This document shows, piece after piece, positions 106 to 1,569 of a stretch of DNA of 64,000 nt. Made by a program: the position numbers and the translations under genes. The notes under the pieces were generated by a model. It was not told the origin of the DNA and did no database searches. It saw nothing but the letters and a program-made list of their open reading frames with translations. Location: positions 45,260,001-45,324,000 of the forward strand of contig NC_088853.1 of assembly GCF_963853765.1 (NCBI RefSeq), read 5' to 3'. Position 1 is the first letter of the stretch; every line of letters starts with the position of its first letter. The stretch comes from Magallana gigas (taxonomy: Eukaryota).

Positions 106-1569
106 CTAGTAGCGTTTGGGGTAGTACTTTTTGTTCCATGGTCTGTAAGATTTTTTGTACGATTTTCCGTATCGATATTTCTTGTACCCGGTATAAGGTT
201 TCTTCACGTATCTTGTTCCCTTTTTGCCGTTTTTCTTACCATTATTACCGTTTTTTCCATTATCCTTGCCATTTTTGTCGTCCTTTTCACGGCTCATCGA
301 GCTTTTCCCGCCACTTTCTTTGCTCTCGCTGCTCTTCTTACTACTGTCTCGGCTGACAGATCCATTGTCATCGCTTCCACCCCCTGTCTTTCCACTCGGC
401 TTGTAACCGCCTTTCCCGCCATATTTGCCAAATCGATATTTACGTCTATAATAATTCCCAACTGATCTCTTCGGTCTATATCCTTTTTTAGAATAGCTCC
501 TTACTGGATAGCCAGATTTTTTGTATGACCGTCTTCTGTAACTTTTTCCTACGCTTTTCCCGTCACTTTCCTTGCTTTCTTGACTTGTTTTGTCGTCATC
601 TCGACTGACGGATCCACTATCGCTTCCTTTTCGGTATTTACGTCTGTAATAGTATCCTGCTGATCTTTTCCCTCTGTATTTCTTCCCTTTTTCCCGACTT
701 TCTTGACTTGTTTTGTCGTCATCTCGACTGACGGACCCACTATCGCTTCCTTTTCGGTATTTACGTCTGTAATAGTATCCTGCTGATCTTTTCCCTCTGT
801 ATTTCTTCCCTTTTTCCCGACTTTCTTGACTTGTTTTGTCGTCATCTCGACTGACGGACCCACTATCGCTTCCTTTTCGGTATTTACGTCTGTAATAGTA
901 TCCTGCTGATCTTTTCCCTCTGTATTTCTTCCCTTTTTCCCGACTTTCTTGACTTGTTTTGTCGTCATCTCGACTGACGGACCCACTATCGCTTCCTTTT
1001 CGGTATTTACGTCTGTAATAGTATCCTGCTGATCTTTTCCCTCTGTATTTTTTCCCTTTTTCCCGACTTTCTTGACTTGTTTTGTCGTCATCTCGACTGA
1101 TGGATCCACTGTCGCTACCTTTTTGGTATTTACGTTTGTAGTATCTCTTTGTCGATCTCTTTCCTTTGGATTTGTAGATGTTTTTCCAGCCATACCGTTT
1201 TCTTCCCTTTCCATTGACGCCATATCCTCTGCCTTTTCCAACTTGGCCATATCGATATCCTCCCTTATATCCGCCACCATAGGCATATTTGTCAACGCCT
1301 TCGTCGTCGCCGCCATTGTTGACTTCATTGTCGCCATTCTCTTTTCCGTCACCTCCTTTCCCGTTGTTTCCATTCTCATCATCTTTTCCATTCTTTCCAT
1401 TTTCACCGTTTCCTTCCTCTTTCCCACCGCCATTGTCCTCTGGTTTTTTGGGATAATATCCCGGCTTGCCTACTCCGTATCCAGGCTTTCCCTTAGGATA
1501 GTACCCGGAGGCGGAAATTTCCGCCACAAGGAAAACAAGCAAGAGGCCAACAACTAGGTGACGGACCAT
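106..1569 (-). CDS. Secreted Tyr/Lys/Gly-rich, Ser/Asp-rich repetitive protein (487 aa); putative adhesive/shell-matrix polyprotein precursor
   Basis: Single coding exon. ATG at 1569 lies 10 nt after an acceptor (ttggttacag|G at 1580/1579). Hydrophobic signal peptide MVRHLVVGLLLVFLVAEISA, then a G/N/D/E/K low-complexity region, five 41-aa repeats and a K/Y-rich tail; TAG at 108-106. TATA box, non-coding first exon and polyA signal are all present. The function is inferred from composition only. Confidence 0.88.
   Translation of the reverse strand: MVRHLVVGLLLVFLVAEISASGYYPKGKPGYGVGKPGYYPKKPEDNGGGKEEGNGENGKNGKDDENGNNGKGGDGKENGDNEVNNGGDDEGVDKYAYGGGYKGGYRYGQVGKGRGYGVNGKGRKRYGWKNIYKSKGKRSTKRYYKRKYQKGSDSGSISRDDDKTSQESREKGKKYRGKRSAGYYYRRKYRKGSDSGSVSRDDDKTSQESREKGKKYRGKRSAGYYYRRKYRKGSDSGSVSRDDDKTSQESREKGKKYRGKRSAGYYYRRKYRKGSDSGSVSRDDDKTSQESREKGKKYRGKRSAGYYYRRKYRKGSDSGSVSRDDDKTSQESKESDGKSVGKSYRRRSYKKSGYPVRSYSKKGYRPKRSVGNYYRRKYRFGKYGGKGGYKPSGKTGGGSDDNGSVSRDSSKKSSESKESGGKSSMSREKDDKNGKDNGKNGNNGKKNGKKGTRYVKKPYTGYKKYRYGKSYKKSYRPWNKKYYPKRY
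575..1170 (-). repeat. 123-bp (41-codon) coding tandem repeat, about 5 copies
   Basis: The motif tgtcgtcatc recurs at 591, 714, 837, 960 and 1083 (exact 123-bp period); internal copies are nearly identical. Confidence 0.95.

What the first reader, a model, noticed from the sequence alone, without database searches (positions are those of the whole stretch)
106..1569. Secreted Tyr/Lys-rich polyprotein with furin + amidation sites: candidate multi-peptide bioadhesive or matrix precursor
Seen: a signal peptide, then five 41-aa repeats (SAGYYYRRKYRKGSDSGSVSRDDDKTSQESREKGKKYRGKR) joined by four exact R-G-K-R sites, plus KGKR and RPKR sites bracketing the array. Established: R-X-K-R is the furin/proprotein-convertase consensus, and X-G-K-R is the prohormone cleavage/amidation signal. 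S-x-E is the FAM20C secretory-kinase motif (SQE and SRE occur in each repeat). Tyr+Lys-rich (DOPA) and phosphoserine-rich sequences are the hallmarks of mussel foot proteins and sandcastle-worm cement. Inference: the precursor is cut into several near-identical ~38-aa amidated peptides. Each has cationic Tyr-rich ends around an acidic, phosphorylatable core, so both coacervation chemistries sit in one polyampholyte. This would be an unusual design for a larval cement, periostracum or shell-matrix protein. Cationic antimicrobial activity is an alternative.
Basis: partly seen in the sequence, partly recalled or inferred. Interest (0 to 1): 0.7.

Follow-up and report, generated by a model that had tools for sequence, protein, structure and literature searches.

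The report
Oyster secreted Tyr/Lys-rich repeat protein
This is a real, transcribed oyster gene for a secreted, unfolded, strongly basic protein built from near-identical 41-residue modules, each carrying a conserved convertase-type site and a conserved phosphorylation-type motif. It probably supplies shell or cement matrix material, but nobody has shown where it acts or whether it is cut.

Summary
Window 106-1569, minus strand, is an intact 487-aa ORF with a signal peptide. It carries a 123-bp (41-aa) tandem array of 4.6 copies, four RGKR sites, and flanking KGKR and RPKR. Only three units are exact copies, and they are 100% identical in DNA; the first unit is diverged and the last is truncated.

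The gene is real. Stranded poly-A reads cover only the exon and are spliced across a GT..AG intron (1580-2074) from a tiny 5'UTR exon behind a TATA box. A 520-aa tandem paralogue with seven full units and a truncated eighth lies about 6.3 kb away.

The only relatives found are Crassostrea virginica proteins with a single unit, one of them misnamed 'transformer-2 homolog'. No Pfam family, mussel foot protein, shematrin or KRMP homology was detected. The model is disordered apart from the signal helix.

RGKR-S is invariant in every copy and in both species, but R-X-[KR]-R is not more frequent than composition predicts (P = 0.15). S-x-E-S-x-E is conserved and strongly enriched (P ≤ 5e-4).

Best reading: a crassostreine-specific, phosphorylatable matrix or adhesive precursor, possibly convertase-processed. 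Cleavage, amidation, DOPA and tissue of expression are all untested. A multi-peptide host-defence precursor remains a live rival. The scan has noted similar secreted low-complexity oyster genes elsewhere in this genome.

The parts
2126..2132 (-). TATA box (TATATAA on the minus strand), about 25-30 nt upstream of the inferred transcription start
   Evidence: Read directly from the sequence. Its position fits the short exon 1 seen in RNA reads. Function is inferred.
2075..2104 (-). Exon 1, a roughly 30-nt non-coding 5'UTR. The 3' end at 2075 is defined by splicing. The 5' end (about 2104) is inferred from the TATA box.
   Evidence: Loose ends of one RNA contig (X2) and four raw reads (X20) at 1581 read TGTGATCTGTCGAC(GA), which equals window 2077-2092.
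1580..2074 (-). Intron, 495 nt, GTATGT...TTACAG on the minus strand
   Evidence: The junction was deduced from the loose ends and the sequence. RNA depth is zero across 1609-2074 in X2, X9 and X20.
106..1579 (-). Exon 2, holding the whole coding sequence (ATG 1569 to TAG 108-106, 487 aa)
   Evidence: Stranded poly-A reads cover 1180-1581 on the matching strand. X9 contigs match with 0 differences over 1141-1382, including positions that distinguish this copy from its paralogue.
1507..1569 (-). Signal peptide coding region (aa 1-21, MVRHLVVGLLLVFLVAEISAS)
   Evidence: It has a hydrophobic core and is the only helix in the model. It is conserved in C. virginica homologues. No SignalP run was available.
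575..1140 (-). Tandem array of 123-bp (41-aa) units, 4.6 copies. Exact units lie at 910-1032, 787-909 and 664-786; the diverged first unit at 1033-1155; the truncated last unit at 535-663.
1156..1167 (-). KGKR (aa 135-138) directly before the first unit
1033..1044 (-). RGKR site 1 (aa 176-179). Identical sites lie at 910-921, 787-798 and 664-675.
   Evidence: RGKRS is invariant in the paralogue and in C. virginica homologues.
466..477 (-). RPKR (aa 365-368), followed by SVGNYYRRKYR, a relic of the unit head
68..73 (-). AATAAA polyadenylation signal, 33 nt after the stop codon
   Evidence: Sequence only. The 3' end was not covered by laid reads.

Best explanation
The gene encodes a secreted, intrinsically disordered, strongly basic (pI about 10) protein. 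So far it has been found only in crassostreine oysters.

The layout is: signal peptide; a Gly/Tyr/Lys/Pro head; an acidic Asn/Gly/Asp/Glu stretch; a Gly/Tyr/basic block; a tandemly amplified 41-aa module; and a basic Tyr-rich tail ending in KRY. Each module has a basic Tyr-rich head (SAGYYYRRKYRKG), a Ser/Asp core with S-x-E-S-x-E, and a basic end (KGKKYRGKR).

I read it as a precursor of extracellular structural material: shell organic framework, periostracum or cement. Three properties would serve this role:
- Tyr/Lys/Gly blocks bind the matrix and can be cross-linked.
- The conserved S-x-E-S-x-E serines are phosphorylated in the Golgi by a Fam20C-type kinase, giving calcium-binding patches.
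- The invariant x-G-K-R|S junctions are, about as likely as not, cut by a furin-type convertase. One transcript would then deliver several identical polyampholyte modules plus distinct N- and C-terminal pieces.

Shown: gene structure, transcription, splicing, strand, secretory leader, disorder, repeat anatomy, motif conservation and enrichment, lineage restriction, tandem duplication, and recent unit amplification.

Inferred: every post-translational step and the site of action.
For: - Real spliced mRNA on the minus strand. Copy-specific exact contigs were found in an RNA run.
- Mature composition is K 18.7, G 17.8, S 12.7, Y 12.0 and R 10.9%, with no Cys, His or Leu; pI 10.1.
- AF2 pLDDT is below 50 everywhere except the signal helix.
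- No Pfam domain was found.
- Paralogue indels are all multiples of 3. Repeat dN/dS is about 0.21, from dS 0.24 and dN 0.05.
- RGKRS and the following G-x-Y-Y/F-[KR]-x-[RK]-Y-x-KG block are conserved between the two species, while neighbouring residues vary.
- S-x-E and S-x-E-S-x-E are enriched in this protein and in the C. virginica homologue.
- Proprotein convertase, Fam20C and Cu-monooxygenase genes are present in this genome.
- Precedents from papers: the Gly/Tyr region of KRMP-3 binds chitin and its Lys-rich region modulates CaCO3 (PMC4498902). The shell protein Pif is cleaved at RMKR (PMC11291548). About one third of limpet shell phosphosites fit the Fam20C motif (PMC4094399). fam20C takes part in pearl-oyster shell formation (PMC5824888).
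Against: - The tissue and stage of expression are unknown. Nothing ties the gene to mantle or larval foot.
- The peptide strings and the C. virginica accession appear in no paper searched, so there is no proteomic support.
- R-X-[KR]-R frequency is explained by composition alone (P = 0.15).
- The RGKRS conservation could reflect a conserved basic block rather than a cleavage site.
- dN/dS rests on about 10 independent substitutions per unit, because the units are copies of each other.
- The layout of an acidic pro-region followed by RGKR and a cationic piece fits a host-defence prepropeptide equally well.
Confidence: 0.45

Rival explanations
1. Multi-peptide host-defence precursor, a 'protein operon'. 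After the signal peptide, an acidic pro-region neutralises cationic modules. A furin-type convertase cuts at each RGKR|S and releases several identical peptides of about 38 aa and net charge about +8, which act on microbes. The design is like apidaecin or Drosophila Baramicin.
For: - The C. virginica homologue has the classic prepro layout: signal, Asp-rich stretch, one RGKR, then a cationic 64-aa tail.
- In this genome that module is amplified between identical RGKR sites, with three units 100% identical in DNA. This is a pattern expected when dosage of a released peptide is selected.
- The signal peptide is the best conserved part, as in many effector-peptide families.
- The nearest language-model neighbour is the apidaecin precursor cluster, though at 0.77 this is noise level.
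- Baramicin shows that tandem peptides between furin sites exist in animal immunity (PMC8423362).
Against: - Each module has 7 acidic residues and an enriched, conserved S-x-E-S-x-E motif, which is unusual for cationic antimicrobial peptides.
- Large Gly/Tyr-rich N- and C-terminal parts resemble structural low-complexity proteins.
- There is no Pfam Apidaecin match.
- There is no evidence of immune induction.
- The Atlas score is below the level that shuffled sequences often reach.
Confidence: 0.2
2. Structural matrix protein that is never cleaved. RGKRS would simply be part of a conserved basic/Tyr block. The whole 50-kDa chain would be incorporated and cross-linked, like shematrin or KRMP-type framework proteins.
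For: - R-X-[KR]-R is not enriched over composition.
- There are 42 dibasic pairs in the protein, so basic motifs are everywhere.
- The conserved block extends well beyond the site, as RGKRS-x-G-x-YY-[KR]-x-[RK]-Y.
Against: - P4 Arg, P3 Gly, P2 Lys, P1 Arg and P1' Ser are invariant in four diverged gene lineages, while P5 and P6 vary (Y, H, I, K) and indels fall right beside the motif.
- A secreted, disordered chain with exposed R-X-K-R passing through the trans-Golgi is a natural convertase substrate (established knowledge of furin specificity).
Confidence: 0.2
3. Neuroendocrine peptide precursor: multiple amidated copies (…KKYR-amide) released at G-K-R in neurons or endocrine cells and acting on a receptor.
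For: X-G-K-R is the classical cleavage and amidation signal. Gly at P3 is invariant although furin does not need it. Multi-copy precursors are typical of neuropeptides.
Against: - The module is 38 aa and low-complexity, with internal RRK and KGKK sites that prohormone convertases would also cut.
- Copy number and unit length differ between paralogues and species, from 1 to 7 units with 41 or 43 aa.
- The large Gly/Tyr-rich flanks are unlike neuropeptide precursors.
- Gly makes up 17.8% of residues, so Gly at P3 is weak evidence.
Confidence: 0.05

Closest known systems
KRMP (lysine-rich matrix proteins), shematrins and prismalin-14 of pearl oysters (Pinctada prismatic-layer framework proteins)
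   Same: These are secreted, basic (KRMP pI 9.5-9.8), modular proteins with a Lys-rich part and Gly/Tyr-rich repetitive low-complexity parts. The Gly/Tyr region binds chitin and the basic region modulates CaCO3 (PMC4498902). They are fast-evolving, lineage-restricted and tandemly duplicated. From my own knowledge, shematrins have a basic C-terminus ending in Tyr.
   Different: No sequence similarity was detected by exhaustive HMMER or Pfam. This protein has no Cys. It has a 41-aa polyampholyte module with S-x-E-S-x-E and RGKR that those families lack. It comes from Ostreidae, not Pterioidea. Mantle expression has not been shown here.
Mussel foot proteins (Mfp-1/3/5) and sandcastle-worm cement proteins (Pc-1/2/3)
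   Same: The composition is similar: Tyr, Lys and Gly-rich and strongly basic, with Ser-rich phosphorylatable stretches. The mix of cationic and anionic character could support complex coacervation. This comparison rests on my own knowledge of those proteins.
   Different: There is no homology. DOPA and phosphoserine are untested. Adult oysters have no byssus. Expression in a foot or cement gland is unknown. Those proteins are not known to be built as convertase-separated identical modules.
Apidaecin and Drosophila Baramicin A polypeptide precursors
   Same: They consist of a signal peptide followed by tandem near-identical peptides separated by furin-type sites, so one gene yields many peptides (PMC8423362). 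Copy number evolves quickly.
   Different: Their units are 18-23 aa, are not Tyr/Lys/Ser-rich, and have no phosphorylation motif. There is no Pfam Apidaecin hit. The Atlas similarity of 0.77 is at noise level. No immune context is shown here.
Pif / BMSP shell matrix proteins
   Same: These are bivalve shell proteins made as one precursor and cut at a dibasic R-M-K-R site into parts with different roles (PMC11291548).
   Different: Pif has VWA and chitin-binding domains and a single cleavage site. This protein has no folded domain and has repeated sites.
C. virginica XP_022305112.1, 'transformer-2 protein homolog isoform X2'
   Same: It is a true homologue. It shares the signal peptide (83% identity over 36 aa), GYGVGK, an acidic stretch, RGKRS-x-G-x-[YF]Y, SKESREKG and a KRY end.
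   Different: It has a single unit and only 163 aa. Its database name is an artefact of Arg/Ser-rich composition. It has a signal peptide and no RRM.

Membership tests
Proprotein-convertase (furin-type) processed multi-peptide precursor | N-terminal signal peptide, so that the chain meets convertases in the secretory pathway | tested here: met
   There is a hydrophobic leader, which is the only helix in the model. It is conserved across species. No dedicated signal-peptide predictor was available.
Proprotein-convertase (furin-type) processed multi-peptide precursor | R-X-[KR]-R sites at the unit boundaries, conserved in relatives | tested here: met
   There are four RGKR sites plus RPKR. RGKRS is invariant in the paralogue and in six C. 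virginica sequences.
Proprotein-convertase (furin-type) processed multi-peptide precursor | Sites more frequent than composition predicts | tested here: not met
   After de-replication, 2 sites were observed against 0.70 expected (P = 0.15). In the C. virginica homologues P = 0.25 and 0.09.
Proprotein-convertase (furin-type) processed multi-peptide precursor | Cleaved products actually present | not testable with these tools
   This needs peptidomics or a western blot.
C-terminally amidated peptides | Gly directly before the basic pair, and an amidating monooxygenase in the genome | tested here: met
   G-K-R is present at 5 of 6 boundary sites. There are PF01082 hits in the genome, but that family also covers dopamine-beta-hydroxylase-type enzymes. 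Amidation itself is untested.
Fam20C-type secretory phosphoproteins | S-x-E motifs enriched and conserved, and the kinase present | tested here: met
   S-x-E occurs 7 times against 1.66 expected (P = 5e-4), and S-x-E-S-x-E 3 times against 0.01. The C. virginica homologue shows the same pattern. Two Fam20C loci are present. Phosphorylation itself is untested.
Mussel foot proteins / DOPA adhesives | Sequence homology to an Mfp family | tested here: not met
   No Pfam family was found. The exhaustive HMMER search found only oyster sequences. Two word-index searches were blank.
Mussel foot proteins / DOPA adhesives | DOPA content and expression in an adhesive gland | not testable with these tools
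   Run metadata are coded. There is no chemistry.
KRMP / shematrin shell framework proteins | Sequence homology, conserved Cys pattern (KRMP), and mantle-edge expression | tested here: not met
   No homologue was detected. The mature protein has no Cys. Mantle expression could not be tested. The resemblance is only in composition and modular design.
Transformer-2 (name carried by the C. virginica homologue) | An RRM domain flanked by RS regions, in a nuclear protein | tested here: not met
   No RRM or any other Pfam domain was found in P0005, in this protein or in the paralogue. A signal peptide is present.
Apidaecin (PF00807) | Match to the family profile | tested here: not met
   There was no Pfam hit at E ≤ 1. 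The only link is a language-model similarity of 0.77.

The most novel reading that the evidence does not exclude
One transcript is a 'materials operon'. A convertase cuts at each invariant x-G-K-R|S junction and releases several identical, amidated peptides of about 38 aa. Their cationic Tyr-rich ends and Fam20C-phosphorylated acidic core would make them self-coacervating polyampholytes. This would be a peptide-based, not protein-based, building block for oyster cement, periostracum or shell framework. Dosage would be tuned by very recent unit amplification, from 1 unit in C. virginica to 5-8 here.
Probability: 0.15. Interest if true: 0.7.

Novelty: new member of a known kind. Interest (0 to 1): 0.4.

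Why it matters
Oysters cement themselves and build shells with poorly known, trypsin-unfriendly, low-complexity proteins. A protein that is 30% Lys+Arg would largely escape standard shell proteomics.

This locus offers a small, clean family to test: two genes here and single-unit relatives in C. virginica. The question is whether convertase cutting and Golgi phosphorylation turn one disordered precursor into repeated polyampholyte modules. If so, it would be a compact natural design for wet adhesives or mineral-regulating peptides.

If the gene is instead immune-related, it would be a mollusc counterpart of the apidaecin and Baramicin 'many peptides from one gene' design.

The work also corrects a database misnomer ('transformer-2 homolog').

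Tried and rejected
- **Word-index protein searches.** The whole protein and its residues 1-150 both gave nothing. The first was swamped by low-complexity candidates.
- **Exhaustive HMMER.** It gave three hits:
  - P0001 is not an independent relative. It is a C>T-converted (bisulfite-type) genomic contig of the same locus, with 107 of 161 mismatches being C>T.
  - P0003 is a spurious repeat match (E = 2e-4, 33% identity).
  - P0002/P0004 led to the C. virginica family.
- **Exact-sequence look-ups.** Neither this protein nor the paralogue is in the collection. I therefore obtained no accession or name for this species.
- **Encoding-contig look-ups.** P0002, P0004 and P0006 were not on record.
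- **Atlas language-model searches.** All three scored 0.76-0.77, against apidaecin and a schistosome miracidial antigen. This is below the level shuffled sequences often reach, so I treated them as leads only.
- **Paper searches.** Searches for the peptide strings, for XP_022305112 / A0A8B8BP41 and for 'transformer-2 protein homolog' with Crassostrea found nothing relevant. The pediveliger candidate paper (PMC6337334) and the chalky-layer multi-omics paper (PMC10543319) could not be linked to this gene without an identifier.
- **The alternative 294-aa ORF** in another frame of the same strand (549-1433) was rejected. It is a by-product of the repeat, has no leader and has no conserved relatives.
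- **An intracellular RS-protein reading**, suggested by the database name, was rejected (signal peptide present, no RRM).
- **Paralogue expression.** I first took the letters at 1448/1450/1455 in half of the X20 reads as proof that the paralogue is expressed. They could equally be an allele or a gene-conversion patch, because other paralogue-specific letters (1264-1346) were not seen, and reads carrying them might fall under the 95% likeness filter. Expression of the paralogue is therefore left open.
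Full report
**What is in the sequence**

On the minus strand, an ATG at window 1569 opens a 487-codon frame that ends at TAG 108-106. 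The first 21 residues, MVRHLVVGLLLVFLVAEISAS, form a typical secretory leader. They are the only helix in an AlphaFold2 single-sequence model. Everything else in that model has pLDDT below 50 (a single-sequence model is a weak test, but it agrees with the composition).

The mature protein is K 18.7%, G 17.8%, S 12.7%, Y 12.0%, R 10.9% and D 7.5%. It has no Cys, His or Leu. Its pI is 10.1 and its mass about 53 kDa. No Pfam family matches, even at E ≤ 1.

**The repeat**

Tandem Repeats Finder reports a 123-bp unit, 4.6 copies, 98% matches, at 575-1140.

They are 100% identical in DNA.
- The unit before them (aa 139-179) differs at 16 of 123 nt.
- The unit after them matches for 30 residues, then diverges and has no RGKR.

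There are four RGKR sites, KGKR before the first unit, and RPKR further downstream, followed by a relic unit head (SVGNYYRRKYR).

**It is a real, spliced, expressed gene**

I laid four RNA runs on 1141-2300. I left the repeat array out, because the tool turns long repeats away.

- Depth is confined to 1141-1581 (poly-A raw reads from 1180). It is zero across 1609-2074 in three of the four runs; the fourth, single-cell run X23 laid only three stray reads.
- In a stranded poly-A run, all 52 reads have the first mate on the + strand. This is the usual signature of a minus-strand RNA.
- One contig and four raw reads continue past 1581 with TGTGATCTGTCGAC(GA), which is window 2077-2092.
- This defines a GT..AG intron (1580-2074; GTATGT…TTACAG on the minus strand) and a 5'UTR exon of about 30 nt. 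That exon lies behind a TATATAA box at 2132-2126.
- AATAAA lies 33 nt after the stop codon. The 3' end itself was not covered by reads.
- Contigs of another RNA run match 1141-1382 without a single difference. They include nine positions that distinguish this copy from its paralogue, so this copy itself is transcribed.

From the read counts I estimate about 10 reads per kilobase per million in the poly-A run. This is moderate, in an unknown tissue.

**Relatives**

The genome is 564 Mb in 29 contigs. Run labels identify it as an oyster.

It holds exactly one other copy, about 6.3 kb beyond the window start on the same strand. That copy is 520 aa, with seven full units of 41 or 43 aa and a truncated eighth. 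The duplicated segment runs from about -137 to 2507 in window coordinates, so it includes the promoter.

Between the copies:
- All indels are multiples of three.
- The 5' third is nearly identical (dS 0.028), suggesting recent conversion.
- The repeats have dS 0.24 and dN 0.05, a ratio of about 0.21. Because the units are copies of each other, this rests on only about ten independent changes. It is suggestive of purifying selection, not proof.

Scoring against 1.8 billion representative proteins found only three hits:
- a bisulfite-type copy of the same locus;
- a spurious repeat match;
- an oyster protein that led to the C. virginica family.

That family includes XP_022305112.1, named 'transformer-2 protein homolog isoform X2'. 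The name is an artefact of composition: the protein has a signal peptide and no RRM.

The C. virginica proteins have one unit only. Their layout is signal peptide, GY-rich head with GYGVGK, an Asp-rich stretch, RGKRS-P-G-x-[YF]-Y-K-P-R-Y-x-K-G, SKESREKG…SRESRE, and a basic Tyr-rich end (…KRY).

The family therefore looks crassostreine-specific on present sampling, and the module was amplified in this lineage.

**Motifs, tested against chance**

K+R make up 30% of residues, and there are 42 dibasic pairs.

| Motif (after keeping one unit) | Observed | Expected from shuffles | P |
|---|---|---|---|
| R-X-[KR]-R | 2 | 0.70 | 0.15 |
| S-x-E | 7 | 1.66 | 5e-4 |
| S-x-E-S-x-E | 3 | 0.01 | none of 20,000 shuffles reached it |

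The count of furin-type motifs is thus not evidence by itself. Position-specific conservation does speak for the junction. R-G-K-R-S is invariant in all units of both paralogues and in all six C. virginica-type sequences. Meanwhile P5 and P6 vary (Y, H, I, K), and a two-residue indel sits right beside the motif. Gly at P3 is not needed by furin but is needed for amidation. However, Gly is 17.8% of the protein, so this is weak support.

The S-x-E enrichment is seen in the C. virginica homologue too, so that motif is non-random and conserved.

The genome has proprotein-convertase P-domains at six or more loci, two Fam20C loci, and several Cu-monooxygenase loci. This shows only that the enzymes are available.

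**Reading**

The design is closest in kind to bivalve framework proteins with repetitive low-complexity domains. It combines a secretory leader, Gly/Tyr/Lys blocks, an acidic stretch, a polyampholyte module with phosphorylatable serines, and a basic Tyr-rich tail. Relevant precedents from papers are:
- In KRMP-3, the Gly/Tyr region binds chitin and the Lys-rich region alters CaCO3 growth (PMC4498902).
- Pif shows that a shell protein can be cut at R-M-K-R into parts with separate roles (PMC11291548).
- Fam20C-type sites make up about a third of limpet shell phosphosites (PMC4094399).
- fam20C is implicated in pearl-oyster shell formation (PMC5824888).

I therefore favour a matrix or adhesive precursor that is phosphorylated and, about as likely as not, cut into modules (0.45). 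There is no homology, however, and no chemical evidence.

**Rivals**

- **Host-defence precursor (0.2).** The C. virginica layout (acidic stretch, RGKR, cationic tail) is also the classic layout of a host-defence prepropeptide. Identical units between furin sites recall apidaecin and Baramicin (PMC8423362). I cannot exclude this reading. Against it are the acidic, phosphorylatable core and the long Gly/Tyr flanks.
- **Never-cleaved structural protein (0.2).**
- **Neuropeptide precursor (0.05).**

What separates these readings is tissue of expression and the state of the secreted product. Neither could be obtained here, because run metadata are coded and there are no proteomic links.

**Novelty and interest**

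This is an uncharacterised and, in one species, misnamed family, but of a kind that is common in oyster genomes. Other notes of this scan list several secreted low-complexity loci in the same genome. I did not test those notes, and they did not change my reading.

I rate it a new member of a known kind, interest 0.4. The most novel reading not excluded is a 'materials operon' that releases amidated, phosphorylated, self-coacervating peptides. I give it a probability of about 0.15; it would deserve about 0.7 if true.

Noticed in passing
G000:C1:45253208-45254767 (about 6.3 kb before window position 1; L002 850-2412, minus strand): Tandem paralogue of 520 aa, with seven full units and a truncated eighth. 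Units are 41 or 43 aa, with a Lys-His insertion just before RGKR in five of them. The duplicated segment includes the promoter. The 5' third is nearly identical to the window copy (dS 0.028) while the repeats differ (dS 0.24), which suggests gene conversion at the 5' end.
   Followed up: partly
P0005 (C. virginica XP_022305112.1): The database name 'transformer-2 protein homolog isoform X2' is wrong. The protein has a signal peptide, no RRM and no Pfam domain. It is the single-unit homologue of this oyster family.
   Followed up: yes
window 39400-41257: An 18-bp minisatellite with 103 copies at 90% matches. It creates long spurious ORFs in all six frames.
   Followed up: no
window 60123-60491 (minus strand): An exon encoding an RRM_1 domain (Pfam E = 4e-8). 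It looks like the first RRM of a CELF-type RNA-binding protein. Another first-reader note (s1-375870) concerns an intron of this gene.
   Followed up: partly
window 43849-44312 and 47180-47798: Two blocks of 21/42-bp tandem repeats, with related units in opposite orientation about 3 kb apart. They may be the ends of a mobile element.
   Followed up: no
window 5316-6350: A satellite-like array with nested periods of 166-187 and 349 bp at about 80% matches.
   Followed up: no
window about 49.2-49.4 kb: A run of N (assembly gap or masked stretch).
   Followed up: no
L009 (Logan contig of ERR10960618), matching window 1034-1787: A public contig of this locus in which 107 of 161 differences are C>T. 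This is a bisulfite-type library assembled as if it were normal DNA. Its predicted protein (P0001) looks like a diverged homologue but is not one.
   Followed up: yes
window 1448, 1450, 1455: About half of the poly-A reads, and one RNA contig, carry the paralogue's letters at these three sites, but not at the other paralogue-specific sites. This could be an allele with a short gene-conversion patch, or reads from the paralogue.
   Followed up: partly
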